In this document: positions 10,417 to 38,729 of the stretch, piece after piece | Layout: each line of letters opens with the position of its first letter | Numbering within the stretch: the stretch's first letter is position 1 | NCBI GenBank assembly: GCA_002269645.1 | Contig: NIVC01000561.1 | Span: 124,001-188,000, forward strand | Direction: 5' to 3' | Source of the DNA: Macrostomum lignano | Lineage: Eukaryota | Length of the DNA: 64,000 bases | Made by a program: the position numbers and the translations under genes | Notes under the pieces: generated by a model | What the model was told of the DNA's origin: nothing | The model's database searches: none | Seen by the model: the letters and a program-made list of their open reading frames with translations, nothing else

Positions 10417-13400
10417 ATGACGGACCCACCTGAGCCGCAGAAGTTCGAGTCAGTGCTCGAGTCGGTGCTCGAGTTGCGAGACTGCGGCCTCCTCACTGAG
10501 TGGCTCATCCATGGCGGCAGTCCTGACGAGCAGGACTCTGACGGCAGGTCCTTCCTGCACGTCGCCAGCTTTCTAGGAAATGCAGAGGCCGCGCGGCTGC
10601 TCGTGGAGGCCTCAGCGAACGTCGATCTGGCCGCAGCTGACGGCTCTACGCCGCTGCACGAGGCTGTCCTCGGTGGCAGCGAGCAACTGACGCGGCTTCT
10701 GCTACGAGCCGGAGCGAGTCCAGCCGCCCGGACGGTGGGCGGCGCCCTGCCGATGCACCTGGCCGCGACCATTGAGTCCGGCGACGACATCGCGCGGCTG
10801 CTGGCCGGACCGACCTGCGCCGCCACCGACAGCCGTCAGGAGCCGCCACCGGTCTCGGGAGCTTCCGGCCCGCTGCCGACTCCGCTGTTTCTGTGCGTCA
10901 TGGTCGGCCGGGCTGGCGCTGTGGACGCCCTGACTGCCGCCGGGGCAGACCCGAACTGCTGCCCCTCGGAGCTCGAGCTGGAGGCCCTTCAGCAGCTGCT
11001 GTGGGCTCTGATAAAGGCTTCGCCTAGTCGGATTTCATTTCTGAAGATATTACAACTCGTATTCGTTTATGAAAATTTTTTTGTGCCCTAAACGGGACGG
11101 CGATGAAGGTCGCAGCAATACTGGGCAATGCCGAGATCGTTCGAATATTGCTGAGTGCCGCTGCAGATCCCGACAGGCGGAACCCGAGCAGCTCTCTTGG
11201 TTTAACTCCACTTCATGAGGCTGTACTATTTGGGCACATTGATGTGATGAGCCGGCTACTTAACGCAGGTGTGAATGTCGATATTACGGATGAAGAAGGC
11301 TTCACTTCTGTTCACCATGCCCTGCCAAGTGACTGTGGGCCTGAAGCACTCGCAGTTCTCCTCAGAGCCGGAGCCAATGTTGATTCATCATCAGATACTG
11401 GTGCAACGCCTCTTCATTTAGCAGTCTTGTATGGTTTTCAGGAGGTCGCGAAGCTGCTGATCAGTGCCAGGGCGAATGTCGACGCTCGAAACTCCAATGG
11501 CGACACGCCGCTGCACCATGCAATTTATAAAAGTAGAGCAGAGCTGGTTGCCATGCTGCTCAGAGCTGGAGCCAGGGTCGACCTGCTGAACAACCGAGGT
11601 CAAACTCCCCTGGCCCTGGCTGTTGATAAAACATCCCCGGAGATCGTCAGCGAGCTGATTAGAGCTGGAGCTTCAGCCGATATGAGCAGCAATAACAACA
11701 AGGATTTGGTCAAGGAGGCCCTCGAGTGTCGGCAGCTGTCCATGGCTCGCATGCTGATTGACGCCTCTGCCAAAATAGATGAAAAAAAGAGCTCAGAGTG
11801 GTTTATGCTTGCCTTAATGGCTGGTTTCACAGAGGCGTTGCAGCTTCTGATCGATGCTGGTGTCAGGCTGGATCAGACAGAGCCGATGGGCCTCATGCTG
11901 TCCTTCTTTACTTCTTTTCAAGAAAATGCCTCAGTCAGAAAGTTGCTGCTTGCTGCCGGAGCGGACATCCCAGCAGATTTGACCAGCTTCTTTTTCGCAA
12001 TCTCAGCCCCCGATCCGTCCAGCCCAGCCGCAGCGCCGACCGTCCGGTCAGCGGAGGAGCAGCGCCAGTTCAGCTCGCGGCTGTCCGAAGCCATGCGAGC
12101 CGCCGGGTTCAAGCAGGCCAACGCGGCAGTTCAGAGCGGCGCTGCGGCCGCGCTGCAGGACATCCTGAGAGACCTGATGGACGACAAGGACATCTTCGTG
12201 TTCGGCAGCTTCGCAGACGGATGGGGCAGCAGCCTGGAGATTCTGAACGGGGAGATCAGCTGGGACTCCGACATTGACGTCACCTTCATGGAGTCCGGTA
12301 GACTTCTGTGCCTGGACTGCGGCTCTGCCGGCTGGACCGGCTGCAGTGGCTGCGGCAGAGATGCGATCCGAGTGCAGTGTGAGAACGGACACGCCTACTA
12401 TGAGCATGGCTGTGAGTAGCTCAATGCCTCTTGAGCATGTAATCATATAAACCAGTAGCTTTCTAAGTGAATGGACCCTCTGGCTTAGCAGATAGTTGCT
12501 GAGAGCTCTGGCTTGGTTCGTGCACTTCGACCCGGCTCTACGGGTCGAGAATTGAAACAGGCAGTGGAGCCTACAGGAGGGAGTTCGACTCAGGTGATGC
12601 AGCAGTGTAACACGGGCCCCACATTGGCAGGATTGTCTGCGTGAAGTCTGGGATTTCTCACAGACTGCTGTCGCTAGGCTGGGTGCCTGGGGGCAAACAC
12701 TTCCCAAACACTTCACAAATGTGTGCGGATTAGTTAAGTTTGCCTTTCCCTGCTTTCTGCTTTCCAGCTGGACTAAGGAGCTATTATCCCGGAATCTAAT
12801 GTGTGTGGATAGAAACAGATAGAAATTGGAGGAAAATTTGGTGGCGCGGCGCCCTACCAAGTCCTGATGCAGCAGGAAAATTTTTGCTGGAATCAAAATA
12901 AACTTAAGTTCGAAAAATCATTTAGTCAGCATTTTTGTCGACACATCCATCTACACATTTACAGCCACGGGACCAAACATGGCAAGGAATCAACCATTTG
13001 AGTTCACAACGATTTTTTCTGGTACCCACGTGAATATCGATTTAATATCTGCCGTGACCTGCTGCCGCTACCCCCGCATCGAGCTGCTGCAGCCCGACTA
13101 CTCAAACCGCAGAGGCCAGCCGTCCCAGATGCCTCAGCGCATCCTGAACCAGCTCAACCAGGAGGCTCTCGGCGACTCTCCAAAGTGCCACGCGGTCGCT
13201 GCGTCGCCTCCTCACAAACGGCCTGGCAGCTGCATGCGGGTGAGCACAACCCTGCTGGAGAGAGCCGTCATGCACAGCCTCACCACCGTGCAGGGCCAGT
13301 TCTTCATCCTCGTCAAGTTCCTCATCAAGAAGGTGATCAGCATCGAGATGAAGGTGAGCGGTCTGAAGACGTACATGGCCAAGAACCTGCTGTTCTACAT

Positions 13401-15013
13401 GCTCGACGAGACGCCGGAAGAAGAATGGAAGCCAGAAAACTTGCTGCAACTCGTGCGGCAGTCGCTGCAGCTGCTGGTCGAGATGATGGAGAGCTCAGAC
13501 TCCGATACAGTGTGCATGAAGCACTTCTTCCTACGAGATGCAGATGTATACTTCAAAAAGAGTCAACCGCCGAAGAAGGACATTGTGGATGCGGTCAATG
13601 GGGTGATTGACGAGCTTCCTCGTTGGCTACATCAATTCCAAGGCCAGCTGAGAAAAAATGCGAGCAACTCTGTGCGGTTCGAGCCTTTCAGGCTGTTGCA
13701 GGCCTTCCGTATCTCAAGTGACGTGCAGCGGTACTCGGGCTACAGCTCAATCTGGGGCTTGGTGAGTCATTGCCTGCTTAAACTCGGCTCGGACCGGCGG
13801 GGTCAGTCGGAGTCCGAGCACCTGTCGGAGCTGCTGCAGCTGATCGATGAGCTGCCAGACTGCGCCAGATCAGCCAGAGAGAGCCTCAGGCTGATGGCGC
13901 ATCTCAAAGTCGGAGCACCGCTGGATGCGGCCGGTGCTGCAGCGGGACTGACGGGTCAGGAGAGCAGCGGCATCGAGTGTCCGGAGAGTCCTGGCGGAGG
14001 CAACGAGCTGCTGTCGGTGGGCGAGGCGAAGGAGCTCGTGTGGCGGCACCTGGAGGAGACTGCAGACTCCGCCACGGTTTTTTTTTTAGTTTTTGAAGAG
14101 GAACTGGATTTTGGATTTCTGCCATCTCGCGGCAATTTATCACTGATCAAGTCTGCAGGAAACAGATTAGAGCTGGAATTTTGTGAAACAAATATTCCGA
14201 ACATTGATTTTAGAAAACTTCTGGCGAGTCTGGCTGCTCAGGATGAGGCAGCTTCAACTGAGTCGCAGAATGTTGAGCCCAACCTACAAATGGTTTCAGC
14301 TGTGTCCAGCAAATTCTTAGTTTTAGCTTCTGAATTTGATGAAGAGAATCTTGCTTCCCTTTTCAACAGGCTGAGTGAAATGATTCAGCAGGTTCCGCAA
14401 CTTTTCGATTTTGCTTTATTAATGGTAAGATTGCGTCACAATAATCAGCCTAGAGTTTCTCCCCTGACTTTCGTGACCATTCTGAATTTTCAGGTTGAAA
14501 ATTTTCCTGAGTTTTGGAGCTTTATCGTAAACTCTTTGGCGGGTGTGCTGCATTGCATCCTGCATGATGAGACACCAGAAGACCTCCGCAACTTCAGAGC
14601 CGCAGCCGCGGATCCGCAGGCCCTGCAGCAGCTCCTGCAGTCAGAAATCGATGCCGTACCGAGCGACCCTGACTTGCCGTCTTCTCTACAGCCTTTTCTC
14701 GAGCGAATCCATGACTTCGTACGTCTGAATTAAATTTAAACAATTTTTTATCCAATTTCAATTTAGGTAGCCATGTAAAGTTGCAGCAATTGTAAATCCT
14801 AGAAACAGCAGATGGTGATTGAACTGTCAGTAAAGTTTTTGTGAATTCTATGTTCTGCCTTTGCCACCATTCCAGCTTCAGGATGAAAGAATTTTAAGCC
14901 TACTCACGGTGCTGCTGCCCATGGCGCTGGATGCAGCTGAGAGGCTGAGATCTGAGGATGAAGCTGGCGAGATGCGGCAGCTGCCCGGACCGCAAGAGGA
15001 TGCTGAGGGCTGA
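10417..15013 (+). CDS. Gene A: ankyrin-repeat / Mab-21 (cGAS-like, cGLR) nucleotidyltransferase fusion; exons 10417-12411, 12965-14718, 14876-15013; ~1295 aa after adding one T at 11076-11082
   Basis: About 12 ankyrin repeats (TPLH motifs), then FVFGSFADGW-x-DSDIDV (NTase GS and DxD). The phase-1 intron (gtgagt...tttacag) joins in frame to HVNIDLI (third acidic residue). Mab-21 C-lobe motifs follow: MRVSTTLLERAVM, LKTYMAKNLLFY, EEEWKPENLL, MKHFFLRDADVY. A phase-0 intron (gtacgt...ttccag) opens a 45-aa acidic terminal exon. Confidence 0.85.
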
Positions 15014-15251
15014 CTGCTCCATGGATTTGGATCACTGCTGACTGACATTGCAGTTCACATGATTTTTTTCCGGATGGGAAGTCTCAGCATAAAGAGGCTG
15101 GACCCGTGCCCCTCCCAGAGCCATAAACTCATTTTTAATCAACCAGAGTTTTTTGTTAATTATTTTTAAGTTTTCTTCTGCACACCAGACAATTCATATT
15201 TATCATCCTTCAGTATATTTTACATTTTCTATTCATTTCTTCTGTATTTTC

Positions 15252-15470
15252 CAGGGGCGTCGCCGTGGATTTTATGGTGGGGGACAAGCCAAGAATTCTG
15301 CATGACTCAATTCCTGCATCATTTTGTGAATCGGTGTTGTTGGCAACGTGAAGCAAAATTATTGAACTCCAGAACGGGTCCCCATTGGTGGGTGGGGGAA
15401 CAAAGCACTGGCATGTCCCCAGCTTTTACTTTGCTCAGCTTCTGCTTGCCCCTCCGGTGGCGACTCACCA
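15252..15470. mobile_element. Possible degenerate MITE (hAT-like ends); partial second copy at ~20022-20215
   Basis: Left end caggggcgtcgcc and right end ggtggcgactc form an imperfect inverted repeat. No TSD verified. Confidence 0.3.
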
Positions 15471-16154
15471 ACAGATTTTCTGCATAACTATCAATAATCT
15501 CAAGATTCGAGATGTTTTCATAACCATGCGTGTAAAACTTGACTATCCAACATTTGTTTTCTTGGACAGTAGAGATCTTGGATTTTATCTTAGTTTTCTG
15601 CTATTTAAACAAATTTATCTTTACCAGCGTTAATTCTGCTTCAAAGATTTTATCAGTTTACCAATATCAATTACTAATTATTTAACTACTGAAACCAAAA
15701 ATATATTTTAATCGAGTCATTTATAGAATTCGACTCAGCCAAGCAGAATCCTCGATGCCAGTTTTTTGTCAAACAATTTTTAAAAATAATTTTCCGGATT
15801 ATTGAATGATCTGTTTCTGTCAGCTAAGCTTTCAAACTGAGTAATATAATCACACTAAAGGGCTCACCAGAGTTCTAGATTCGGGGACAGTGGATGCTCA
15901 CATCACTTGCACGAAACAAGAAACCATTACGTCAGAAGTCTGGGACACTGGGAGTTGCACTGATGCAGCTGCAGCATCATCTTAACTGCAGTCTTTTGAC
16001 ATAAGCCTGCATTTTAGTTAGGGTCTGAGAGGCACCAGTCTTGGTATTGACCTTGAATTTGCTTTCAAAAGAAGTTTTAGAAGCAGGAGGCTGTGTGCAC
16101 CCTATGGCGCACTTTAAGCGACATTGTCGCACAACCGGCGAGAGGCATTACTGC

Positions 16155-16404
16155 CCATTCTGCCGACTCCCCTGAGCAGGCACACAAGCGCGCGGATACG
16201 TACGCAGTCATACGCACAGGCACACACTCACACAGGAGTGCACAGCGGCCCCAACTTATATTTATCGTTAGGCATGTACACTTCACTGCGCCTTGGGGGT
16301 TGGGCCTAAATTGAACGATCAGAGATTGATGTGACTGCATTTAGAATCGAGCCTGGGCCGCTGGCCCATCAGAGCACCGCAATGGACCACTGGGCTACGG
16401 CTGC
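16155..16404 (-). mobile_element. tRNA-derived SINE copy 1
   Basis: The minus strand begins with Pol III A-box (TAGCCCAGTGG) and B-box-like (GGCTCGATTC) motifs. The body matches 35738-36025. Confidence 0.7.
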
Positions 16405-16927
16405 GGCCCTCCTAAGCGTCTAACATCCTCTTCTTTGAGTGTCTGCTTGGCTGTTCGACAATTGTGACTTTCGCTCAGGTGCCGAGTCTCTGACTTTCGA
16501 TCGTATTTAAGCAATTTTGCATTAAAGCTACTGGCAGTAGTCAGACTGAGTTCTGATCTGGACTCGACCTGCGTATGCATGTACCAGCCCAAGGGCTCTA
16601 ATTCAAGTAGCCTGGAAACCTACACGGATTTTCTGTCTTGGGGAAACATTGAAGCAATCATTCATTCAATTCATGACGGTAGAAGGCATCGGGGTCACCA
16701 GCAATCTGTTTTTACATAATTTTCCAGTATTCGGGACCAAGACCTGGTTCCAGATTCTTTCATTACTTTTATTGGGTTTAGAAATTTCTAAATAAGGAAT
16801 TTATGACTCTTTCACCGACTGCAGCAGTACGAATGCTGTATAATTCACATCTCTTTTTCGAATTCTCTTCTCCTGCACTTTTCTGTTACCGAATTTTCAG
16901 CCCGATGAAACAGCAACTTTGGGCTGT

Positions 16928-17568
16928 GTCAACCACCTGTGTGTTAGACAGCAGTGTCACCTGTGTGTTGAACAGCAGTATCACCTGTGTGTTGAACAGC
17001 AGTGTCACCTGTGTGTTAGACAGGAGTGTCACCTGTCAGTTAGGTGACAGGAGTGTCACCTGTGTGTTAGACAGCAGTGTCACCTGTGTGTTAGACAGCA
17101 GTGTCACCTGTGTGTTAGACAGCAGTGTCACCTGTGTGTTAGACAGCAGTGTCACCTGTGTGTTAGACAGCAGTGTCACCTGTGTGTTGAACAGCAGTGT
17201 CACCTGTGTGTTAGACAGGAGTGTCACCTGTCAGTTAGGTGACAGGAGTGTCACCTGTGTGTTAGACAGCAGTGTCATCTGTGTGTTAGACAGCAGTGTC
17301 ACCTGTGTGTTAGACAGCAGTGTCACCTGTGTGTTAGACAGCAGTGTCACCTGTGTGTTAGACAGCAGTGTCACCTGTGTGTTAGACAGCAGTGTCACCT
17401 GTGTGTTGAACAGCAGTGTCACCTGTGTGTTAGACAGGAGTGTCACCTGTCAGTTAGGTGACAGGAGTGTCACCTGTGTGTTAGACAGCAGTGTCATCTG
17501 TGTGTTAGACAGCAGTGTCACCTGTGTGTTAGACAGCAGTGTCACCTGTGTGTTAGACAGGAGTGTCA
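16928..17568. repeat. 24-bp satellite (GTCACCTGTGTGTTAGACAGCAGT), array 1, with ~195-bp higher-order period
   Basis: Tandem units. The variant gtcacctgtcagttaggtgacagg recurs at about 17030, 17225 and 17445. Confidence 0.95.
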
Positions 17569-17682
17569 TCTTGATGATATGAAATCATACAGAACAGTTG
17601 AAATCCACAGGGCAGGATTTCGCTCCTTATTAAAACAAAGACTAGCTACCACAACAGCATTGTCCCCAAAAGGACCGATACG

Positions 17683-19783
17683 GGTTGTAAGGAGATCGCA
17701 AAGCTGCTGATCGGTGCCAGGGCGAATGTCGACGCTCCAGACTCCGATGGCAACACGCCGTTGCACCACGCAGTTCGTAAAAGAAGAGCAGAGCTGGTTG
17801 CCATGCTGCTCAGAGCTGTAGCCAGGGTCGAACTGCTGAACAACTGGCGTGAAACTCCCCTGACAATGGCTGTTGTTTATATGAGAACCCCGGACATCGT
17901 CAGCGAGCTGATTCGAGCTGAAGCTTCTGCCGATATGAGCAGCAACAACAATGAGGATTTGGTCAGCCATGCCATCAAGTGTCGGCAGCCGACCGTGGCT
18001 CGGATGCTGATTGACGCTTCTGCCGACAACATGTTAGAGTGGTTTGTACTTGCTATAGGGACCGGTTTCACAGAAGTGGTGCCAGTTCTTATCGATGCAG
18101 GGGTCAGGTTTAATCAAACAAGGCTGATGATTCCAAGCAATGACTCAGTCAGACAGTTGCTGGTTGCCGCTGGAGCAGAAATCGCACCAGAAGCGTTGAC
18201 CAGCTTCTTTTCTGCAATCTCAGCCCCCGATCCGTCCAGCCCAGCCGCAGCGCCGACCGTCCGGTCAGCGGAGGAGCAGCGCCAGTTCAGCTCGCGGCTG
18301 TCCGAAGCCATGCGAGCCGCCGGGTTCAAGCAGGCCAACGCGGCAGTTCAGAGCGGCGCTGCGGCCGCGCTGCAGGACATCCTGAGAGACCTGATGGACG
18401 ACAAGGACACCTTCGTGTTCGGCAGCTTCGCAGACGGGTGGGGCAGCAGCCTGGAGACTCTGAACGGGGAGATCAGTCCGGACTCCGACATTGACGTCAC
18501 CTTGATGGAGTCCGATAGACTTCTGTGCCTGGACTGCGGCTCTGCCGGCTGGACCACCTGCAGTGGCTGCGGCAGAGATGCGATCCGAGTGCAGTGCGAG
18601 AACGGACACGCCTACTATGAGCATGGCTGTGATTGTCGGATATGCCTGTCGGAACATGCCTGTCGGAGCTGCTGCAGCTGATCGGTGAGCTGCCAGACTG
18701 CGCCAGATCAGCCAGAGAGAGCCTCAGGTTGATGGCGCATCTCAAAGTCGGAGCACCGCTGGATGCGGCCGGTGCTGCAGCAGAACTGACGGGCCAGGAG
18801 AGCAGCGGCATCGAGTGTCCGGAGAGTCCTGGCGGAGGCAGCGAGCTGCTGTCGGTGGGCGAGGCGAAGGAGCTCGTGTGGCGGCACCTGGAGGAGACCG
18901 ACACTGCCGCAGTGCTTCAGTTTCGGTTCAAAAAGGAATTGGATTTTGGATTTCTGCCATCTCGCGTCAAGAAATTATTTATCGTTTTTTTCAGGCGTCA
19001 GATGGAAGCCGGAATTCTTCTGGTCGAAAATTCCTCCAATAGATTTTCGAAAACTTCTTGCGAGTCTGGCTGCTCAGGATGAGGCAGCTTCAACTGAGAC
19101 GCAGAATGTTAAGCCCAATCTGCAAATGATTCAAGCTGGGTCCAGCAATTTTTTGGATGAAGAGAATTTACCTCCCGATGTAGACTGGCTGCTTATATGG
19201 AGTGAGCAGGCTCCGCAAATTTTCGATTTTGTTTTTTCTATGGTAAGATTGCGCCGTAATGCTGGGTATTCTGCTGAGAGTTTCTACCATGACTTTTGTG
19301 ACCACTCTGAATTTTCAGGCCGAAAAGTTTCCTGAGGTTTGGAGTTACTTTTTTAACGGCTTAGCAAGTGCATCGTATTGCCTGCTCCAGGATGAGGTAG
19401 CAGCTGTAGACGAAGCTCAAGAAGTACTCCGCAAGCTCAGAGCCGCAGCCGCGGATCCGCAAACCCTGCAGCAGTTCCTGCAGTCTTTAGTGGATGACGA
19501 ACTATTGTATGATGATGAAGAACTGAGGGAATTCGTACGTATTTCGTACGTATTAAATTCGTACGTAATTTAAACAGCAGGTGGTGATTGAATTGTCAGT
19601 AAAGTTATAGTGAATTCCACTGTTGTGTCTTTCCGACCATTCCAGCTTCAGGATGAAAGAAAGTTAAACATAATCACGACGGTGCTGCCCATGGCGCTGG
19701 ATGCAGCTAAGAGGCAGTTGTCCGAGGATGAAGCTGGCGAGATGCGGCAGCTGCCGGGGTCACAAGAGGATGCTGAGGACTGA
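17683..19783 (+). pseudogene. Gene B: 5'-truncated, internally deleted ANK-cGLR pseudogene
   Basis: Starts mid-ankyrin (homologous to gene A ~11440) and keeps GSFADGW/DSDID. At 18632-18659 it jumps to the equivalent of A 13821, losing intron 1, the third Asp and most of the Mab-21 lobe, with at least two further frameshifts (~18990, ~19270). It retains exon 3 (19646-19783). Confidence 0.85.
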
Positions 19784-20769
19784 CTGCTCTATGGATTTTG
19801 ATCCCTGCTGACTGACATTGCAGTTCACATGATTTTGTCCGGATGGGAAGTCTCAGCATAAAGAGGCTGGACATACATAAACATATTTTTAATCAACCAG
19901 AGTTTTTTTGAAATTTTTAAAAGTTTTTTTCTGCATGCGAGACATACGTAGCTCATATTTATTATCTTTTAGTATATTTTACATTTTCTTTTTATTTTAT
20001 TCGAAACTTTCTTTTGTAATTTCCAGGGGCGTCGCCATGGATTTTATGATGGGGGGGCAAGCCAAGAATTCTGCATGACTCAATTCCTTCATCATTTTGG
20101 GAATCGGTGCTGTTAGCACTCATTTTGGCAGAGTGAAGCAAAATTTTTGACTTCCATAACGGGTGACACTTGGTGCAGGTTGGGGAACAAAGCCTTGCCA
20201 TGTCCCCCGTAGCTTTTGCTTCTTTTACTGAGCTTTTACATGGCCGCTGATATTTTCTAGATTTTCTACATAACCATCAATAATTTCGAGATTAGATAGA
20301 CTTTTAATCTTAGCAAACGACTTTATGTATATTATAACAGCTTTTAATAAATCATAATTCATTTTCGCTAAAAAAATAAATTTAATAATTCTCTGGATTA
20401 TGTGCTGATCTGTTTCTGTCAACTAAGCTCGCAAACTCAGTAATATAATCAGATTAATAAGCTCATCAGAATTCAAGATTTGAGATCAAGGACACTGGGT
20501 GCTCAAATCACCTGCACGAAATAAGTAACCGTTGAGTCAGAAGTCCGAGACACTGGGAGTGGCACTGATGCAGCCGCAGCATCATCTTGACTGCAGTCTC
20601 TGGCATAAGTGTGTACTTCTGTTAGGGTCTGAGAGACACCAGTCTTGGTATTGACCTTTAATCTGCTTTCGAAGAAGTTTTAAAGCTTCAAGCGTCTCAT
20701 ATTTATCAGTTAGAAGCAGGAGGCTGCGTGCACTCTTCATGGCAATGAGCCGTGGCAATTTCAACGCAA

Positions 20770-21475
20770 CCAATTAATTGAAGCCAAGTTTTTATCCAGC
20801 ATCTTGCAAAGCGTATCTTGCATCAGTCAATCAATTTAAACTTTTATTTTAAGATTTTAATAATTAAACTGCATAGGAATTGCAAAATCAACAGTACAAA
20901 AGCAGTGTCAGCATTTCATGTTAATTTTTTGTAGGCTAACATCCTACTGGTCGATAAAAGTACTGAAAGTCATTAAATAAAAATAATAAACTAGACTGAC
21001 GTTCTTATTCTTTCAATACTTCTACGAGTACAATTTGCTGATTTCTGTAGAAGTAAAGATTGCATGCCTAATTAAAGGAACATCCGTGAAAGGTGCAATT
21101 GTTGAAGGCAAACTTCGTACCAACAGAATAGGCAGCTTCAGAGCTAACACTAACCTCCGTCGATACTACAGTCTTACCGACGACCTCAACAGCATCAGCA
21201 TGTTCGGGTGTCTTGCTCTTGTATTGGTTGAGCACCGAATTCGGAATGGTATGCAAATTGCGCTGAAGATTCTCCTCTGTGAGGAATGTCTTCAACCGCT
21301 GTCCATGGCTGATCATCTGCTTCGTCTGCTGGTAGGCTGTCAATCTCGGCGATGTCCATGGCGCTGATATCTACGCCACCTTCCCGCAGGAGCGGCAGAT
21401 GCTCATCGGGCTCGGGCTCCTTTTGTATGAATTCGAGAAATCTAGCGAACTCGTTGTCCCTTCAATTCTGTCATT
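20770..21475 (-). other. Foreign coding-like fragment interrupting the duplicated unit (unknown gene/TE 3' end)
   Basis: Absent from the A and C units. The minus strand reads EFARFLEFIQKEPEPDEHLPLL... and, in another frame, ends FAFNNCTFHGCSFN*. Family not identified. Confidence 0.3.
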
Positions 21476-21479
21476 GCTC

Positions 21480-21595
21480 GAGCAGAGCCAAGCCGAGATT
21501 CCAATTCAGCCCCAAATGAATGTGACTGCACTTGGAATCGAGCCTGGGCCGCTGGCACATCAGAGCGCCGCGCTGGACCACTGGGCTACCGCCCC
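21480..21595 (-). mobile_element. tRNA-derived SINE copy 2 (head only)
   Basis: The minus strand reads GCGGTAGCCCAGTGGTCCAGCGCGGCGCTCTGATGTGCCAGCGGCCCAGGCTCGATTCC (A and B boxes). The body is cut off by the 20770-21475 insert. Confidence 0.7.
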
Positions 21596-21734
21596 CCCCC
21601 CCTAAGAGTCTACCAACCTACTTGGAGTGTCTGCTTGCTGCTCGATAAATGTGACTTTCTCTCATTTGCTGAGTTTGACAGTTGATCATATAGCTATTTG
21701 AGTAACTTTGCATTGAAGCTACTGGCAGTAGTCA

Positions 21735-23110
21735 GCAGGGTCACCTGTGCGTTAGACAGCAGTGTCACCTGTGTGTTAGACAGCAGTGTCACCTGTGTGT
21801 TAGACAGCAGTGTCACCTGTGTGTTAGACAGCTGTGTCACCTGTGTGTTAGACAGCTGTGTCACCTGTGTGTTAGACAGCAGTGTCACCTGTGTGTTAGA
21901 CAGCAGTGTCACCTGTGTGTTAGACAGCAGTGTCACCTGTGTGTTAGACAGCAGTGTCACCTGTGTGTTAGACAGCAGTGTCACCTGTGTGTTAGACAGC
22001 TGTGTCACCTGTGTGTTAGACAGCAGTGTCACCTGTGTGTTAGACAGCAGTGTCACCTGTGTGTTAGACAGCAGTGTCACCTGTGTGTTAGACAGCAGTG
22101 TCACCTGTGTGTTAGATAGCAGTGTCAAGGTGTTAGACAGCAGTGTCACCTGTGTGTTAGACAGGAGTGTCACCTGTAGGTTAGATAGCAGTGTCACCTG
22201 TGTGTTAGACAGCTGTGTCACCTGTGTGTTAGACAGCTGTGTCACCTGTGTGTTAGACAGCAGTGTCACCTGTGTGTTAGACAGGTGTGTCACCTGTGTG
22301 TTAGACAGCAGTGTCACCTGTGTGTTAGACAGCAGTGTCACTTGTGTGTTAGACAGCAGTGTCACCTGTGTGTTAGACAGCAGTGTCACTTGTGTGTTAG
22401 ACAGGAGTGTCACCTGTGTGTTAGACAGCAGTGTCACCTGTTTGTTAGACAGCAGTGTCGCCTTTGTGTTAGACAGCAGTGTCATCTGAGTGTTAGACAG
22501 GTGTGTCACCTGTGTGTTAGACAGCAGTGTCACCTGTGTGTTAGACAGCAGTGTCGCCTTTGTGTTAGACAGCAGTGTCACCTGTGTGTTAGACAGGTGT
22601 GTCACCTGTGTGTTAGACAGCAGTGTCACCTGTGTGTTAGACAGCAGTGTCACTTGTGTGTTAGACAGCAGTGTCACCTGTGTGTTAGACAGCAGTGTCG
22701 CCTTTGTGTTAGACAGCAGTGTCATCTGAGTGTTAGACAGGTGTGTCACCTGTGTGTTAGACAGCAGTGTCACCTGTGTGTTAGACAGCAGTGTCACCTG
22801 TGTGTTAGACAGCAGTGTCACCTGTGTGTTAGACAGCAGTGTCACCTGTGTGTTAGACAGCAGTGTCACTTGTGTGTTAGACAGGAGTGTCACCTGTGTG
22901 TTAGACAGGAGTGTCACCTGTTTGTTAGACAGCAGTGTCGCCTTTGTGTTAGACAGCAGTGTCACCTGTGTGTTAGACAGCAGTGTCACCTGTGTGTTAG
23001 ACAGGAGTGTCACCTGTGTGTTAGACAGCAGTGTCACCTGTTTGTTAGACAGCAGTGTCGCCTTTGTGTTAGACAGCAGTGTCACCTGTGTGTTAGACAG
23101 CAGTGTCACC
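21735..23110. repeat. 24-bp satellite (GTCACCTGTGTGTTAGACAGCAGT), array 2
   Basis: Same unit as 16928-17568, in the corresponding part of the duplicated unit. It explains the NTQVTLLS/DSSVTCVL ORFs. Confidence 0.96.
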
Positions 23111-23829
23111 TTACAGATATGAAATTATTCGAGCAGCTTTAACCCACATGGCAGGATTCCGCACCTCAATAAAACAAAGACTACCAAAACAACTTTTGGG
23201 GCGCTAAAAAGGCCGTTTTACATAAACAATGGCCGAAAAAGACAGAAAATATTCTGCCAATTATTTTTGATAGAACTGTCAGTTTAAGAAGAGCTGAGTT
23301 TCCAAGAAATCAACACGAGCACGAGTTTATTTCTTTAATTTGTTAAAATCAGCACTGAGAACGGACTCGTTTGCACATCCAATTGAAACAAAATGCCTGA
23401 AAACGTAAACGATAATAATTATATTTACCTGTATGTCGAATCTGCATGTTGAACGTTGAGTTCATAATTCAAGATCTTACAGTTTAATTTGTCAGAGTAA
23501 AATCCCAAGCTTCAAAAACTTATTGAATACATACAGTCTTTATAATCATTTATGTCTGCGACTTCTTTGTTTGGGACAGTGTAATTAATGTAATATTATG
23601 ATTATGTGTGCAAAAGTAGTTTCTTCAGTGGCAGGCTAAAAAATCTTCCTGTTCATCCTCTGGGCAGGTTACATTTTCACCTGTGAGTCGTGTATTTGTC
23701 AACTAGGAAGCGGCTCCATTATTTTTAACAGCTTATCCCTGCTGTTATTATTCAAATGAATTAAAAAAACCTTCAGCTTGATGTGCTTTAGGCAGCGTAA
23801 ACTGTTGTTGCATATCATCAATAGCGCTA

Positions 23830-24600
23830 AGTTAATATAAGGTTGTAAAAATGGAATTTTCATCCTCATCCCATTATTAAAAATCCTTATCATGCAATGT
23901 CATGATGGCTTTGACAATTTCAGACTCGCTCACAGAACCATCACAGCTTTCTCGGCCATCCCAACGTGTCGAATCCTCTTCTGCTTTTACTTTGATCTCT
24001 GTCTCTTGAATTTTTTTCCATGTCTGATTGGTGAGCTCCATTGCCACAGGCTTCCCCTCCAGCTACACAGCCTGCGGCTCCCAGAGCACCTGCAACGATT
24101 GGGATAAGAGCCGCCAGAGGTAGGATTCCACCAGAATTTTCATCTGTGAAGCTGTGCGCTTGCTCATTACACTGAAATATCTGCTGTGTGGAATCGATTT
24201 TGACTTTGACCTTGGGTAATTACCCTGATTTGATGATTTGATTGATTTTGTGTTTAATATTATAATTACTTCTGTGTCAGCTGGTATGACGAATAGTTCA
24301 GCTTTTCTGAATGTTCCGTGCGGGTAATTTAAGGGTAATTTAGTGGATAAAAGTAATAATCTCCGGGGTCTAAGGTAGTATTCCTGTCTGTTTTATGCGG
24401 ATCAGGGCTAAAATACGGAGTACATATTTCTATGCGTGTTTAAATAGCTACAAGTAGGGTGGCGGTCTGTCTACCCATTTTGTAGAGTATTGTCCTGCAT
24501 TAATGTTTAGCTCTTCAGCTGTCTGCTTGGTGTCTGCATCTATAGACTACAGCGTGACACGTTTTTTGCTAATTAATTGATGAAGCCAGCTGATTCTACC
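23830..24600 (-). mobile_element. Degraded Polinton/Maverick (adintovirus-like) fragment encoding an adenovirus pX/mu-like core protein
   Basis: With stops and frameshifts, the minus strand reads EYYLRPRRLLLLSTKLPLNYPHGTF... (~24390-24240) and GGILPLAALIPIVAGALGAAGCVAGG (24132-24055). The latter is the GG-hydrophobic motif I recall from adenovirus pX and Polinton homologues. Assignment is from motif recall, not a search. Confidence 0.5.
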
Positions 24601-24679
24601 GGTAGTTTATTCCATGCAACTAAGAAAAGTTAACAATAAAAATAAGTCAACCCAAATTAAAGGTTCGAAACAAGGTCGT

Positions 24680-25072
24680 CAAGACTGAACTTCGGTCTCT
24701 CGAAGGGTCGAACAGCAAGGAGAGCAGAAGCATAAGCAGACTGTACACAAGAATAAGAACACTTTTCCGATTCATCTCTCTCCTAGTGACTCACGTGACC
24801 ACTCTGAGGGCTCTTATTGTCTGGATGGCATAAACAAGTCTGGAGTGCAAAATAATTATCCAAGTGCACGGACAAACCTTGCTCGCTCGCTTTTTAATTT
24901 GCTTCCACTTACAGAGACGAATCACTGTCTGGATAAGCAAAAAACCAGAAAAATACAATATACGTAAGTACTAAAATACTTCTTTTAAGCACAGGAGCTA
25001 GAGCTCCTTTCAAAAAAACTGGCAATAAACTTTTGTGGCACCAAAAATCAATAAAAAACAGAACAGAAAGTC
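24680..25072 (+). promoter_or_regulatory. Conserved upstream block of ANK-cGLR gene C
   Basis: Paralogous to 10085-10416. Contains tgactcacgtgac (overlapping AP-1-like and E-box motifs). Confidence 0.5.
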
Positions 25073-28000
25073 ATGCCGGACTCACCTGAGCCGCCGCAGT
25101 TCGAGTCGGTGCTCGAGTCGCTCGAGTCGGGAGACTGCGGCCTCCTCACTGAGTGGCTCATCCATGGCGGCAGTCCTGACGAGCAGGAATCTAACGGCAG
25201 GTCCTTCCTGCACGTCGCCAGCTTTCTCGGAAACGCAGAGGCCGCGCGGCTGCTCGTGGAAGCCTTGGCGAATGTCGACCTGGTCGCAGCTGACGGCTGC
25301 ACGCCGCTGCACACAGCAGTTCATAAAAGAAGAGCAGAGCTGGTTGGCATGCTGCTCAGAGCTGGAGCCAGGGTCGACCTCCTGAACAGCAATGGCCTGA
25401 CTCCCCTAGCCCTGGCCGTTAATAAAGAAAACCCGGAGATCGTCAGCGAGCTGATTCGAGCTGGAGCTTCAGCCGATATGAGCAGCAATAACAACAGGGA
25501 TTTGGTCAGGCAGGCCATCATGTGTCGGCAGCTGTCCATGGCTCGGATGCTGATTGACGCCTCTGCCGAAATAGATAAAAAAAGAGCTTAGAGTGGTTTA
25601 AGCTTGCCTTGTTGACTAGTTTCACAGAGGCGGTGCAACTTCTGATCGATGCTGGTGTCAGGCTGGATCAGACAGGGCCGATGGGCCTCATGCTGTCGTT
25701 TTTTACCATGCTTCCAGGCAATGCCTCTGTCAGAAAGTTGCTGCTTGCTTCTGGAGCAGAAATGGCACCAGAAGAGGTAATGAGTTTCATTTCCGCATTC
25801 TGCTCAGCCCCAAGGCCACCCCGCCAAGCCGCAGCGCCGACCGTCCGGTCAGCGGAGGAGCAGCGCCAGTTCAGCTCGCGGCTGTCCGAAGCCATGCGAG
25901 CCGCCGGGTTCAAGCAGGCCAACGCGGCAGTTCAGAGCGGAGCTGCGGCCGCGCTGCAGGACATCCTGAGAGACCTGATGGACTGCAAGGACATTTTTGT
26001 GTTCGGAAGCTTCGCAGACGGATGGGGCAGCAGCCTGGAGACTCTGAACGGGGAGATCAGCTGGGACTCCGACATTGACGTCACCTGGATGGAGTCCGAT
26101 AGACTGCTGTGCCTGGACTGCGGCTCTGCCGGCTGGACCGCCTGCAGTGGCTGCGGCAGAGATGCGATCCGAGTGCAATGCGAGAACGGACACGCCTACT
26201 ATGAGCATGGCTGTGAGTAGCTCAGTGCTTCCTGAGCATGTGATCATTATAAACTAGTGACTTTTTAGTGTCCTGGGCCCTCTGGTTTAGCAGGTAGTTG
26301 CAATGAGCTCTGGCTTTTTTGTGCGCTTCGACCCATATTGAAGCGGGCAGTGGAGCCTACAGGAGGGAGTTCATGTCAGATGATGCGGCAGTGCAAAACT
26401 GGCAGGATTATCTGCGTCAACTCTGGGCAATCTCACAGACTGCTGTATTCAAGGTGGGTGGTCTGTAGGCAGACACGTTCCGCCTTGCTTGTTGCCTTTC
26501 CCTGCTCTCTGCTCTCCAGCTGCACTCGACGAAAGTAAAGAGCAATTTAAAAGGCATTTCTTGTATGTGGATTGCTAAAGTAACCAGAGAAATAAAAGAT
26601 GAGAATGAATGCTTGCTGGCGGGGCTGTGTGCAAAGCATTGAGTGCTTGCTGGAATCAAGATAAATTAAAGTTGGTAAATATTGCAGTCATCGTAGTTGT
26701 ATTAGTTCTTATGCAGCGTTTAGGAGGCTAAGCACTCGATTTTTCACATTCACAGCCACGGGACCTAACATGGCAACAATGCGTTCATCAGAGCCTTTTA
26801 ATCATCGTTTGCATGTCAATATCGATCGAATACTTGCCGTGCCCTGCTGCCGCTACCCCCGCATCGAGCTGCTGCAGCTCGGCTACTCAAACCGCAGAGG
26901 CCAGCCGTCCCAGATGCCTCAGCGCATTCTGAACCAGCTCGAACAGGAGGCTCTCAGCCACTCTCCAAAGTGTCACGCGGTCGCTGCGTCGCCTCCACAC
27001 AAACCGCCTGGCAGCTGCATGCGGGTGAGCACAACCCTGCTGGAGAGAGCCGTCATGCACAGCCTCACCACCGTGCAGGGCCAGTTCTTCATCCTCGTCA
27101 AGTTCCTCATCAAGAAGGTGATCAGCATCGAGATGAAGGTGAGCGGTCTGAAGACGTACATGGCCAAGAACCTGCTGTTCTACATGCTCGACGAGACGCC
27201 GGAAGAAGAATGGAAGCCAGACAACTTGCTGCAACTCGTGCGGCAGTCGCTGCAGCTGCTGGTTGAGACGATGGAGAGCTCAGACTCCGATACAGTGTGC
27301 ATGAAGCACTTCTTCCTACGAGATGCCGACGTGTACTTTGAGAGGGATCAACTCCCGAAGAAGGACATTGTGGATGCGGTCAATGGGGTGATTGACGAGC
27401 TTCCTCGCTGGCTGCATCAATTCCAAGGCCAGCTGAGAGAAAATGCGAGCAACTCTGTGCGGTTCGAGCCTTTCCGGCTTTTGTGGGACTTTCATTTTTC
27501 ACGTGACGTGCAGCGGTACTCAGGCTACAGCTCAATCTACGGCTTGGTGAGTCATTGCCTGCTTAAACTCGGCTCGGACCGGCGGGGTCAGTCGGAGTCC
27601 GAGCACCTGTCGGAGCTGCTGCAGCTGATCGGTGAGCTGCCAGACTGCGCCAGATCAGCCAGAGAGAGCCTCAGGTTGATGGCGCATCTCAAATTTCACG
27701 CACCGCTGGATGCGGCCGGTGCTGCAGCAGAACTGACGGGCCAGGAGAGCAGCGGCATCGAGTGTCCGGAGAGTGCTGGCGGAGGCAGCGAGCTGCTGTC
27801 GGTGGGCGAGGCGAAGGAGCTCGTGTGGCGGCACCTGGAGGAGACCGACTCCGCCACAATTTTAAATTTTTTGTTTGAAGAGGAACTGGATTTTGGATTC
27901 CTGCCAGCTGCTGCAAAGCAACATTTTATTATCAGGTTCAATTTGAACAATCAGACATTTCCGCTGCCAGTAGACTTTGTCCAGTTGCATAAGTCCCTGG

Positions 28001-29136
28001 CAGGTCGGGAATCAGCTCCATTTGAGACGCAATTTGGTCAGGAAATCGTTGCTGGACTCTCCCAGAGATGTGACGTGAAAGCTCTTCATGAGGCTTTTGA
28101 TGTGGCTGAAACAATCGAAAGCGGGACTCGGCGCTTTCTATGCGGAAGGATGGGTCAGATTTTACAGGCATATCCTGAGTACAGTAATTATGTCATATCA
28201 TTAGTAAGATTTTATTCAATTTTTTACTTTGACTGTCGCACTCCACATTCATTGACTTCACCTGCAAATGCTTCTCGAATCAACATTTTTCAGATGATTG
28301 CAAGCCCACAATTTCGAGGCCGACTGATAGAGTTCGGTTCTGAAATTTTTTGCCATTTGTTTCAAGAGTTACGTCTTGAAGACATCCGCAACTTTCGTGC
28401 CGAAGCTGCGTCTCCTGAGTGGCTGCAGGAAATCCAGCAGAAATTTCTGCAGTGGTTTTTGGACAGCGCAGAAAGCCAACCGCCTCTACAGCTCTTTCAG
28501 TCAGATGAAGCTTTGAGATCGTCCATTTCTGAAGTCATCAAATCGGTAGTTTAAAAAATAGCAAAAATTAAAACATTAGAAAGCAAAATAATTTAAATAC
28601 TTTGGGAGTTTCAATCAAATAAAAATGTTAGCCACAAATTTTAGTCCAGCACTTTCAAGGCAAAGATTTCAGCTTTGGAAACCCATCTGTTTCAGATGTC
28701 GGCTGAACCATGCATCTTTCAAGACGCGCTACTCTTGGCCCTAGATAAAGCTGAGAGTCTGCAATCCGAGGCTGAGCCTGGCGAGATGCAGCAGCTCCCT
28801 GGGCTGCAGGAGGAGCCGCTGGATGGAGCCGAGAGTCTGCAAGCCGAGGCTGAGCCTGGCGAGATGCAGCAGCTCCCTGGGCTGCAGGAGGAGCCGCTGG
28901 ATGGAGCCGAGAGTTTGCAATCCGAGGCTGAGACTGGCGAGATGCAGCAGCTCCTTGGACTGCAGGAGGAGCCGCTGGATGAAGCTGAGAGTCTGCAATC
29001 CGAGGCTGAGCCTGGCGAGATGCAGCAGCTCCCTGGGCTGCAGGAGAAGCCGCTGGATGAAGCCGAGAGTCTGCAAGCCGAGGCTGAGCCTGGCGAGATG
29101 CAGCAGCTCCCTGGGCTGAAGGAGACTCCGGATTGA
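25073..29136 (+). CDS. Gene C: ankyrin-repeat / Mab-21 (cGLR) nucleotidyltransferase fusion; exons 25073-26212, 26756-28545, 28696-29136; ~1123 aa after adding one base at 25577-25583
   Basis: Same exon phases as gene A (gtgagt...ttcacag; gtagtt...tttcag). About 5 ankyrin repeats, intact GS/DSDID/VNID, near-identical Mab-21 core, divergent C-terminal region and an expanded acidic exon 3. Confidence 0.85.
28750..29133 (+). repeat. Coding 78-bp (26-aa) tandem repeat x5 in gene C exon 3
   Basis: AESLQ(S/A)EAEPGEMQQLPGLQEEPLD(G/E) four times plus a partial fifth copy. Confidence 0.9.
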
Positions 29137-37960: not shown

Positions 37961-38729
37961 TTCTTATCTGGCAGAAAAGCATAATGTATGCAGGTATTGT
38001 GTACACTCAGCAGCATGTTAAAGTTTTCACCTTAACTGTGGGGCTGCAGGTGATGCAATTTGCGTCACAAGGCTAATATGTTGCTAAAGTGTATTTTTAT
38101 CAGAGTTATTTCTATTGATAAGCTTCTATTCTTTTAGCTTATCCCTCATTCCCAGCGCCTCGCTGGATGTTGTTGCGGTTTCCATGAGAACAATAACCAA
38201 CATAGCAGCTGGGAGTCTATTAATTCCTCTTCTCCTATTAATATTCCCGAAATTGCGCCCCTCAATCCTTGCTACTTTCACCTATCTACAAAATAATCAG
38301 CTCGAGTCTGTTGATAAAAGTACAAAACCAGCCCTGTAGAGTACAGCCTGCAGTCCTAACTTATGCGCGGTTCCTCACTTTCCTCACTTTATCTCACATC
38401 CTATTGTGATCGGCGCGTGATTCTATCATTGGATTTGAGAAGCACATACTCTGCACCCGCTTGCACTTCGCAGCGGCAACTCACTGTTCAACTAGAAACC
38501 AATAATATGCTCAATAATCAGCTTTTTCTGCAAGTTGCCTTCGCGTGGGCAGAAGGTGGAGCAATAAAATATCGAGAATGTGGCTCCTCAGATTTTGTAT
38601 TAATCGCGCTCAACTTAATTGTTTGCTATTTGTTTTACTGAATTCGTCAGCTTGGCCTTCATTGGTTAAGGCTCTAATTACTCAACTTATTGCGTAAACA
38701 TTTTAGACTGACTAACTTCCCGCAGTCTT

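What the first reader, a model, noticed from the sequence alone, without database searches (positions are those of the whole stretch)
12020..28545. Near-identical catalytic core but sharply bounded, divergent C-terminal domain between paralogues
Seen: from AAAPTVRSAEEQ to EEELDFGFLP, genes A and C (and B where retained) are almost identical even at synonymous sites. Immediately after FGFLP, the ~220-aa regions of A (14122-14718) and C (27905-28545) cannot be aligned by eye, while A and B remain related, and codon usage turns AT-richer. Small dense islands of divergence sit inside the core: the segment before the third Asp (ARNQPFEFTTIFSGTHVNIDLI vs ATMRSSEPFNHRLHVNIDRI), FKKSQPP vs FERDQLP, and LQAFRISSD vs LWDFHFSRD. 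Inference: gene conversion or strong constraint homogenises the enzyme while a swappable C-terminal module and surface patches diversify, as in NLR-type arms races.
Basis: partly seen in the sequence, partly recalled or inferred. Interest (0 to 1): 0.75.

Follow-up and report, generated by a model that had tools for sequence, protein, structure and literature searches.

The report
Mosaic flatworm cGAS-like gene cluster
Three tandem copies of a flatworm (Macrostomum lignano) ankyrin-repeat plus cGAS-like enzyme gene keep an almost uniform catalytic core, apparently by copying sequence between copies, while three short loops and a tail domain differ sharply, which is the pattern expected of a diversifying sensor family.

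Summary
The window is Macrostomum lignano DNA with three tandem + strand genes that encode ankyrin repeats fused to a cGAS/Mab-21-like nucleotidyltransferase. A has one frame break. B is a decayed copy with a 1.4-kb deletion. C has a 1-nt frameshift.

- **Core:** outside three islands, A and C differ at 4.2% of sites (dS 0.06-0.10). Intron 1 has K = 0.32, the ankyrin region dS = 0.27, and the C-terminal domain dS > 2.
- **Boundary:** it is sharp but lies about 45 nt upstream of FGFLP. GC3 falls from 0.75 to about 0.40 there.
- **Tails:** they are not different modules. They are deeply diverged versions of one domain (28% identity, E = 1e-10), split by a conserved 69-91-nt intron.
- **Second contig:** it carries an intact B, a C whose upstream part is identical but whose tail differs, and a fourth copy. 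The copies combine long or short ankyrin arrays with three tail types.
- **Control:** a distant paralogue keeps the same protein block yet has saturated dS, so constraint alone does not explain the uniform core.

Best reading: gene conversion, GC-biased, homogenises the core; old tail cassettes and hypervariable loops escape it. An arms race is plausible but not shown (ω is about 1). The family is uncharacterised.

The parts
10417..14733 (+). Gene A: ankyrin repeats, a cGAS/Mab-21-like NTase and an alpha-type C-terminal domain. The reading frame is broken at 11091-11103.
   Evidence: ORFs. Pfam Ank and Mab-21_C hits. Splice sites read directly from the sequence. The frame break lies in a divergent linker with a 16-nt indel relative to D'.
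12027..12411 (+). A, core part 1: spine helix and NTase N-lobe, with the GS motif FGSFADGWG at 12201-12227, DSDIDV at 12264-12281 and the Cys-rich insert CLDC..CSGC at 12309-12353.
   Evidence: Motif coordinates. These residues are invariant or nearly invariant in 23 family members. 93-100% identical to C.
12412..12964 (+). A, intron 1 (GTGAGT...TTTACAG, phase 1). It is not homogenised.
   Evidence: Donor and acceptor are conserved in A, C, B', C' and D'. A-C K = 0.32 with 118 gap columns.
12965..14075 (+). A, core part 2: the strand with the third Asp (VNIDLI, 13030-13047), the Mab-21 C-lobe and a helical extension up to HLEET-DSA.
   Evidence: Pfam Mab-21_C scores 27.4 bits against a cut-off of 24.1.
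12982..13029 (+). Island 1 in A (ARNQPFEFTTIFSGTH): a length-variable loop just before the catalytic third-Asp strand.
   Evidence: The equivalent loop in the P0001 model has pLDDT below 50 (residues 384-401).
13552..13572 (+). Island 2 in A (FKKSQPP). There are three discrete alleles among the copies: A; B', C' and P0002; C and D'.
13696..13722 (+). Island 3 in A (LQAFRISSD): a hypervariable 5-6-codon patch that differs in all six copies compared.
   Evidence: The equivalent loop in the P0001 model has low confidence (residues 640-649).
14076..14733 (+). A, alpha-type C-terminal domain. It is AT-rich and is interrupted by mini-intron 2 at 14425-14493 (69 nt, GTAAGA..TTTCAG).
17602..19573 (+). 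Gene B remnant. It is truncated at the 5' end. The stretch from the intron-1 donor to LSELLQLIG is deleted, with junction filler at 18635-18658. The alpha-type tail carries frameshifts.
   Evidence: The intact counterpart B' in L001 retains 1372 bp at this site.
25073..28554 (+). Gene C: short ankyrin array, NTase core and beta-type tail. A 1-nt deletion in GATG-A7 at about 25580 shifts the frame.
   Evidence: The UniProt model P0003 contains exact stretches of this gene (144, 116 and 449 aa).
26213..26755 (+). C, intron 1. It is over 99% identical to the introns of C' and D'.
25828..27857 (+). C core (exon parts 25828-26212 and 26756-27857), with islands at 26773-26814, 27337-27357 and 27481-27507.
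27858..28554 (+). C, beta-type C-terminal domain, with mini-intron 2 at 28204-28293 (90 nt).
28717..29125 (+). Probable 3' exon of C, encoding acidic 26-aa repeats (a 78-bp minisatellite). Single copies of the motif lie downstream of A (14921-15001) and B (19691-19771).
   Evidence: The public models P0001 and P0003 splice into this sequence.
16934..17568 (.). 24-bp minisatellite separating units A and B. The same array lies between B and C at 21729-23111.
   Evidence: Its length differs in L001.

Best explanation
The region is a tandem cluster of a Macrostomum lignano lineage-specific gene family. Each protein has N-terminal ankyrin repeats, a cGAS/Mab-21-like nucleotidyltransferase with an intact G-S...D-x-D...D active-site signature, a helical extension, and a helical C-terminal domain of about 180 aa with no known family.

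**Shown**
- The NTase core is kept 96-100% alike between copies, at silent sites too. Intron 1, the ankyrin region and the 3' flank are 20-30% diverged, and the tail is saturated.
- The uniform stretch ends at a structural domain boundary.
- Three short predicted loops inside the core are hypervariable.
- The tail exists in at least three old versions, found in different combinations with long or short ankyrin arrays and at the same locus in two haplotypes or homeologues.

**Inferred mechanism**
- Repeated non-reciprocal exchange (gene conversion, sometimes between unlinked loci) homogenises the core. Because conversion is GC-biased, it has driven third codon positions of the core to GC3 0.75.
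- Conversion tracts stop where the sequences are too diverged to pair. The tail and the loops therefore persist as old, AT-rich variants, and they are occasionally moved whole as cassettes.

**Inferred function**
- These are germline-encoded sensors or signalling enzymes. A common nucleotide-signal-producing core is combined with variable recognition or regulatory parts: ankyrin array, loops and tail.
For: **Identity of the genes**
- Best hits are all M. lignano.
- Pfam finds Ank and Mab-21_C.
- The active-site residues are invariant across 23 members.
- The AF2 model of paralogue P0004 (pLDDT 78) has as best PDB matches Cv-cGLR1 8gjw (E = 4e-6), cGAS, MAB21L1, Tc-cGLR and MB21D2.
- Distant profile hits are Pfam Mab-21 plus Mab-21_C proteins.

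**Heterogeneous silent divergence, A against C**
- Core dS is 0.06-0.10, intron K 0.32, ankyrin dS 0.27 and tail dS 2.1-2.6.
- Fisher p values run from 2e-5 to 2e-39.
- C and D' have intron K 0.009 inside flanks with dS 0.16-0.19 (p = 1e-10 to 1e-15).

**Discordant histories along the gene**
- C equals C' upstream, but its tail is 90% like D' at the nucleotide level and only about 55% like C'.
- Island 2 groups (C, D') against (B', C').
- The PHI test gives p of about 0.001.

**GC3**
- GC3 is 0.75 in the core, 0.40-0.57 in the islands and 0.34-0.44 in the tail.

**Control for constraint**
- In the block YPRIELL..LLVEMMES, A against P0005 (another contig) has dS 0.05-0.5, with saturated flanks.
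- In the same block, A against P0006 has dS 0.8-1.4 despite low dN.

**The tail is a real, maintained domain**
- Open frames of about 170-200 codons persist in AT-rich sequence in four copies.
- The mini-intron splice signals are conserved, and the intron is 91 nt in D', which is not a multiple of 3.
Against: - The PHI test loses significance when the islands are removed (p = 0.07-0.5, 34 informative sites). Within the non-island core, most sites fit one tree.
- Only six copies from two contigs were compared, plus two distant loci.
- No reads were available. Paralogue cross-talk during assembly polishing could inflate core identity.
- A and C carry frame breaks and B is decayed, so part of the cluster may be non-functional in this haplotype.
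- Tail ω of about 1 fits relaxed constraint as well as it fits diversifying selection.
- The Pfam NTase model PF03281 does not hit, and a family profile finds no PDB sequence.
- Foldseek TM-scores are only about 0.5, and they were obtained on a 48%-identical paralogue.
- The tail is modelled at low confidence.
- No enzymatic, expression or immune evidence exists for these genes.
Confidence: 0.7

Rival explanations
1. There is no conversion. The core is alike simply because purifying selection, plus strong GC-ending codon preference, holds it, while the rest drifts.
For: The most identical stretch (13245-13440) encodes the most conserved protein block of the whole family. GC3 there reaches 0.93-0.97, which by itself lowers apparent dS.
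Against: P0006 keeps the same protein block (dN 0.13-0.2) yet has dS 0.8-1.4 against A. The non-coding intron 1 is over 99% identical among C, C' and D' while their coding flanks have dS 0.16-0.19. Expression-linked codon selection cannot differ between parts of a single mRNA.
Confidence: 0.08
2. It is an assembly artefact. Collapsed or chimeric repeats, or polishing with mis-mapped paralogous reads, made the cores look alike and created the mosaic joins.
For: The genome is very repeat-rich (37 tandem-repeat rows in the window). One of the two frame breaks sits in a homopolymer run, which is typical of long-read errors: the 1-nt deletion in C next to an A7 run. A's break sits beside a T7 run, but against D' it is a 16-nt indel in a divergent linker rather than a 1-nt homopolymer error. 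No reads could be examined.
Against: The copies differ at 4% of core sites and have distinct introns and flanks. A separate NCBI contig shows the same pattern in three more copies. A UniProt model reproduces gene C exactly over 449 aa, across islands 2 and 3 and the boundary. Polishing cannot make 80%-identical DNA 96% identical, and it cannot generate the GC3 contrast.
Confidence: 0.07
3. The duplication is recent, and positive selection then drove very fast divergence of the tail and loops. Neither conversion nor cassette exchange is involved.
For: Tail ω is 0.86-1.42 among the beta and gamma versions. Island 3 changes are almost all non-synonymous, with ω up to 2.0 in some pairs.
Against: Selection does not raise dS. 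Tail dS is saturated (2.1-2.6) and island dS runs from 0.7 to infinity, while core dS is 0.06-0.10. Intron 1 and the flanks show that the A/C split is old (K of about 0.3).
Confidence: 0.07
4. The cluster is a decaying gene graveyard. Its variable parts reflect relaxed constraint in pseudogenes that are still occasionally converted, not functional diversification.
For: B is deleted and frameshifted. A and C each have a frame break. ω is 0.7-0.9 in the ankyrin region and about 1 in the tail.
Against: Open frames of about 170-200 codons in AT-rich tails would be lost by chance; the expected probability of no stop is about 1e-5 per copy (own estimate). Splice signals and catalytic residues are conserved. 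C' and D' are intact in L001. Public gene models exist for C and C'.
Confidence: 0.2

Closest known systems
Animal cGAS-like receptors (cGLRs), including ankyrin-fused cGLRs (Li et al. 2023, PMC9980059; Cv-cGLR1, PDB 8gjw)
   Same: The fold is a bilobal Mab-21/cGAS NTase, and the best Foldseek match is Cv-cGLR1. The G-S...D-x-D...D signature is present. The family has expanded within one lineage. An N-terminal ANK fusion is an architecture that paper lists for a minority of cGLRs, for example in the coral S. pistillata.
   Different: The sequences are very remote. Pfam PF03281 does not hit, and a family profile finds no PDB sequence. There is an extra helical extension and a C-terminal domain of about 180 aa with no known family. 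A Cys-rich insert (CLDC..CSGC) follows the D-x-D strand. [quoted passage not shown] No ligand, product or STING partner is known here.
Human/mouse cGAS and MAB21L1
   Same: The fold matches over 350-390 aligned columns (E = 3e-5 for 4k9b, 2e-3 for 5eom). The Mab-21_C domain is hit.
   Different: Identity is only 12-15%. There is no cGAS-type zinc thumb at the cGAS position. Instead, CC (AVPCCRYP) and CH (KCHAV) residues are conserved across the family (all invariant except one Cys, which is nearly so), and their role is unknown. DNA binding was not tested.
Clustered immune receptor families with concerted evolution plus hypervariable parts, such as plant NLR clusters and MHC/KIR-type micro-conversion (own knowledge, not tested here)
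   Same: The genes form a tandem cluster. Copies are present or absent, and deleted, depending on the haplotype. A conserved signalling core is combined with variable recognition parts. Histories along the gene are mosaic.
   Different: The enzyme class and domain set are different. Positive selection has not been demonstrated. The variable parts here are three short loops and a helical tail rather than LRR surfaces.
GC-biased gene conversion in multigene families (own knowledge: Galtier/Duret model)
   Same: GC3 is high exactly in the homogenised tracts and low in the tracts that escape.
   Different: This is inferred from composition only. No polymorphism spectrum or direct conversion events were observed.

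Membership tests
Mab-21 / cGAS-like receptor NTase superfamily | Bilobal cGAS/Mab-21 nucleotidyltransferase fold | tested here: met
   The AF2 model of paralogue P0004 (48% identical to A, pLDDT 77.6, pTM 0.79) was searched with Foldseek against the PDB. The top 42 matches are all cGLR, cGAS, MAB21L1, MB21D2 or CD-NTase structures, the best being 8gjw at E = 4e-6, with target-normalised TM 0.46-0.56.
Mab-21 / cGAS-like receptor NTase superfamily | Active-site signature: G-[GS] loop, [DE]-x-[DE] and a third acidic residue | tested here: met
   FGSFADGWG is at 12201-12227, DSDIDV at 12264-12281 and VNIDLI at 13030-13047. All three are also present in C, and the first two are present in B. S59, G63-G65, S79, D80 and D82 are invariant and D152 is nearly invariant in 23 members.
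Mab-21 / cGAS-like receptor NTase superfamily | Pfam Mab-21_C (PF20266) above the gathering score | tested here: met
   A exon 2 scores 27.4 bits and C 26.0 bits, against a cut-off of 24.1.
Mab-21 / cGAS-like receptor NTase superfamily | Pfam Mab-21 NTase domain (PF03281) hit | tested here: not met
   There is no hit at E <= 0.01 for any piece of A, B or C. However, distant profile relatives of the family do carry PF03281.
cGLR pattern-recognition receptors (functional sense) | Ligand-activated synthesis of a cyclic nucleotide signal | not testable with these tools
   This needs recombinant protein assays.
cGLR pattern-recognition receptors (functional sense) | A STING or other receptor for the product in the same genome | not tested
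   No genome-wide search of M. lignano was possible. No paper links Macrostomum with cGLR or STING.
Concerted evolution by gene conversion | Silent divergence in the tract far below the adjacent non-coding and synonymous divergence | tested here: met
   core pS 0.078 against intron 0.26 and ankyrin 0.23. C and D' have intron K 0.009 against flanks of 0.16-0.19.
Concerted evolution by gene conversion | Statistical signal of recombination among copies (PHI or runs tests) | tested here: inconclusive
   PHI gives p of about 0.001 on 65 informative sites, but p = 0.07-0.5 when the islands are excluded. Runs tests are significant for C-C', C-D', C'-D' and B'-C'.
Concerted evolution by gene conversion | Low dS not explained by constraint (control paralogue) | tested here: met
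   P0006 has the same conserved protein block but dS 0.8-1.4. P0005 has dS 0.05-0.5 in the block, with saturated flanks.
   Tail ω is 0.86, 1.05 and 1.42 among the beta and gamma versions, and 0.3 for alpha against beta, where dS is saturated. Island 3 ω ranges from 0.3 to 2.0 on 14 codons. No site-model test was possible with six recombining copies.
   The window has a deleted B and lacks D'. L001 has an intact B' and an extra D'. C and C' share identical 5' parts but have different tails.

The most novel reading that the evidence does not exclude
Macrostomum carries a large, previously undescribed family of modular cGAS-like sensors. A conversion-homogenised catalytic core is recombined in the germline with exchangeable specificity parts: the length of the ankyrin array, three hypervariable loops next to the active-site lobe, and an old polymorphic C-terminal cassette. 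That would be a combinatorial diversification strategy for a nucleotide-second-messenger immune receptor, in a phylum thought largely to lack cGLRs.
Probability: 0.3. Interest if true: 0.75.

Novelty: new variant of a known kind. Interest (0 to 1): 0.55.

Why it matters
cGLRs are now seen as a major family of innate immune receptors in animals, but how their specificity diversifies is largely unknown, and flatworms were reported as mostly lacking them. This cluster marks which parts of a cGLR-like protein are held uniform (the catalytic core) and which are free to vary: three loops, the tail and the ankyrin array. That gives concrete candidates for ligand-recognition or regulatory surfaces, which can be tested in M. 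lignano using RNAi and transgenesis.

It is also a clean within-gene example of how conversion tracts, GC3 and domain boundaries coincide. If the genes turn out to be inactive or non-immune, it remains an ordinary though tidy case of concerted evolution in a repeat-rich, recently duplicated genome.

Tried and rejected
P0001 and P0004 were modelled instead.
- The Foldseek search of the full-length P0001 model was swamped by ankyrin/DARPin hits and said nothing about the NTase or the tail.
- A family profile searched against PDB sequences found nothing relevant; the only hit was prefoldin at E = 0.69.
- A profile search with the four tail cassettes returned no hit at all, not even P0001 or P0003, which contain them. 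I treated this as a tool limitation. The number of tail types in the genome is therefore unknown.
- The PHI test without the islands was not significant, so I do not rest the conversion claim on it.
- I considered that window C might be a simple unequal crossover between C' and D', and rejected the idea. C's tail is only about 90% like D', and the downstream flanks match both at only about 80%.
- I considered an intron at the FGFLP boundary (exon shuffling) and rejected it. The ORF and the public model P0001 read straight through. The real intron lies about 300 nt further on.
- Literature searches found no paper on Macrostomum cGLRs.
- The tail has no Pfam family and is modelled at low confidence.


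Full report
**What is in the window.** The sequence is eukaryotic: it has spliceosomal introns and is dense in minisatellites. Protein searches place it in the flatworm Macrostomum lignano. All named hits come from that species, and the UniProt model P0003 contains exact stretches of 144, 116 and 449 aa of window gene C.

Three paralogues lie in tandem on the + strand, separated by a 24-bp minisatellite (16934-17568 and 21729-23111).
- **A** spans 10417-14733.
- **B** is a remnant at 17602-19573.
- **C** spans 25073-28554.

Each encodes ankyrin repeats followed by a domain that hits Pfam Mab-21_C just above threshold. The gene structure, read from conserved GT/AG sites, is as follows.
- Exon 1 ends in phase 1 at 12411 in A and 26212 in C.
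- Intron 1 is 12412-12964 in A and 26213-26755 in C.
- Exon 2 follows.
- A second short intron lies inside the tail, bounded by GTAAGA...TTTCAG. It is 69 nt in A (14425-14493), 90 nt in C (28204-28293), 84 nt in C' and 91 nt in D'. The public model P0001 splices it.
- A further acidic-repeat exon probably follows, at 28717-29125 in C.

A's frame is broken at 11091-11103, in a divergent linker. C has lost one G next to an A7 run at about 25580. B lacks the stretch from the intron-1 donor to LSELLQLIG, and its tail carries frameshifts.

**Checking the observation.** A against C in 60-nt windows gives these identities.

| Segment | Identity |
|---|---|
| Ankyrin region | about 80% |
| Core, 12039-12411 | 93-100% |
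| Intron 1, 5' half | 63-83% |
| Intron 1, 3' half | unalignable |
| First 60 nt of exon 2 (island 1) | 50-60% |
| Core, 13027 to about 14075 | mostly 90-100% (80-87% in windows over islands 2-3 and near the boundary); perfect run 13245-13440 |
| After about 14075 | about 40% |

Similarity returns in the 3' flank: 15545-16157 matches 29886-30546 at 77%.

The true edge of near-identity lies just after HLEET-DSA, about 45 nt before FGFLP. DFGFLP itself is a conserved islet. The three islands are real: 46% divergence in 81 nt against 4.2% in the other 1380 nt of the core.

The tails cannot be aligned as DNA but are homologous proteins, with 28% identity over 177 aa and E = 1e-10. A and B tails are related. 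GC3 falls from 0.75 to 0.34-0.44 at the boundary, and it also dips in islands 1 and 2.

**More copies.** The gene for P0001 lies on NCBI contig NIVC01000561.1 (locus L001). Where it matches the window closely, over window 15897-26970, identity is mostly about 98% (93-99% by segment), so the contig is another haplotype or homeologue. From my own knowledge, M. lignano is a recent hidden polyploid. L001 holds three copies.
- **B'** is a B copy that still has the 1.37 kb deleted in the window.
- **C'** is the same as P0001.
- **D'** is an extra copy with a long ankyrin array like A's.

C and C' are about 100% identical through the ankyrin region, intron 1 and the early core. Identity then falls to 92-87% at islands 2 and 3, and to about 55% in the tail. 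C's tail is instead about 90% like that of D'.

There are therefore at least three tail versions: alpha (A, B, B'), beta (C, D') and gamma (C'). They occur in four combinations with the ankyrin array: long with alpha, long with beta, short with beta and short with gamma. Island 2 has three discrete alleles, distributed discordantly: A alone; B', C' and P0002; C and D'. Island 3 differs in all six copies and consists almost wholly of non-synonymous changes in 5-6 codons.

**Conversion or constraint.** Silent divergence between A and C differs strongly by segment.

| Segment | Silent divergence |
|---|---|
| Core | dS 0.06-0.10 |
| Ankyrin region | dS 0.27 |
| Intron 1 | K = 0.32 |
| Islands | dS 0.7 to infinity |
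| Tail | dS 2.1-2.6 |

The differences are highly significant. Between C and D', the non-coding intron 1 has K = 0.009 while the flanking coding sequence has dS 0.16-0.19. Codon-level constraint cannot explain that.

A control settles the rival explanation. The distant paralogue P0006 keeps the same conserved protein block but has dS 0.8-1.4 against A. P0005, on another contig, has dS 0.05-0.5 in just that block and saturated dS beside it. Protein constraint alone therefore does not give low dS, and exchange seems to reach unlinked loci.

The PHI test supports recombination (p of about 0.001) but only when the islands are included. Without them it is not significant. The case therefore rests on the divergence contrasts and the discordant segment histories. 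The match between high GC3 and homogenised tracts fits GC-biased gene conversion (the model is from my own knowledge).

**What the protein is.** The family is too remote for Pfam PF03281 or for a sequence profile against the PDB. Three lines of evidence still place it.
- The AF2 model of P0004 matches Cv-cGLR1, cGAS, MAB21L1, Tc-cGLR and MB21D2.
- Its distant profile relatives are bona fide Mab-21 proteins.
- The G-S, D-x-D and third-Asp residues are conserved.

Family members carry ankyrin arrays of very different length, and one model carries a caspase domain. In the P0001 model the near-identity boundary falls where a new small sheet-and-helix subdomain begins. The tail is helical but modelled at low confidence, and all three islands fall in loops, parts of islands 1 and 3 with pLDDT below 50.

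Li et al. 2023 list ANK-cGLR fusions and state that most Platyhelminthes lack cGLRs. I found no paper on Macrostomum cGLRs.

**Verdict.** Gene conversion of the core and cassette-like persistence and exchange of the tail are well supported. An arms race is plausible but unproven: tail ω is about 1, and some copies are broken. This is an uncharacterised, lineage-specific variant of the cGLR/Mab-21 kind with an instructive mosaic evolution. The interest is moderate.

Noticed in passing
window 6111-9676 (+): Two adjoining long ORFs encode aspartyl protease, reverse transcriptase, RNase H and integrase. This is a Ty3/gypsy-type LTR retrotransposon pol, lying immediately upstream of gene A.
   Followed up: partly
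window, whole length (e.g. 183-1093, 2574-3130, 32174-33938, 37150-37970, 41140-42001, 42763-43526, 44044-44688, 46781-47885, 48462-49369, 50064-51142, 54292-55591, 60290-62165): The density of minisatellites with 14-88-bp units is extraordinary, and several have extreme strand skew. They account for the odd composition profile.
   Followed up: no
window 11091-11103 and about 25580: Both apparent frame breaks in A and C lie next to homopolymer runs (T7 and A7). C' in L001 is intact at the C site. These could be long-read assembly errors rather than real pseudogenisation.
   Followed up: partly
window 18635-18658; L001 2339-3711: The 1.37-kb deletion in B begins exactly after the intron-1 donor (TGTGATT). 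It is bridged by 24 nt that repeat the motif GCCTGTCGGA. The deletion is absent from the other contig, so it is polymorphic between haplotypes or homeologues.
   Followed up: partly
window 28744-29124; also 14921-15001 and 19691-19771: A 78-bp minisatellite encodes acidic 26-aa repeats (AESLQSEAEPGEMQQLPGLQEEPLDG) and appears to be a 3' coding exon of gene C. Only single copies of the motif lie downstream of A and B.
   Followed up: partly
A 13057-13062 (CC in AVTCCRYP) and the KCHAV motif downstream; family alignments A1 and A4: A Cys-Cys pair and a Cys-His pair about 40-55 residues apart are conserved across the whole family (all invariant except one Cys, which is nearly so). They may form a metal site in the place where cGAS has its zinc thumb. 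The A/B/C clade also has an extra CLDC..CSGC insert at 12309-12353.
   Followed up: no
proteins P0071 and P0065 (representative library): One family member is modelled as NTase plus ankyrin repeats plus a caspase (Peptidase_C14) domain. Another combines WSC, ankyrin, Mab-21_C and a RING finger. If these gene models are real, they hint at cell-death or ubiquitin signalling outputs.
   Followed up: no
L001 about 11900 (P0001 residues 453-465): C' carries a 13-aa tandem duplication (EDSEQEALSHSPK) in a loop of the NTase. It is absent from window C.
   Followed up: no
window 31605-32348 (-): An ORF with an EF-hand pair, probably an exon of an unrelated calcium-binding protein gene downstream of the cluster.
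   Followed up: no
tool behaviour: A profile search with the four tail cassettes returned no hit, although P0001 and P0003 contain two of them. A negative result from that tool with a short alignment query should not be trusted.
   Followed up: no
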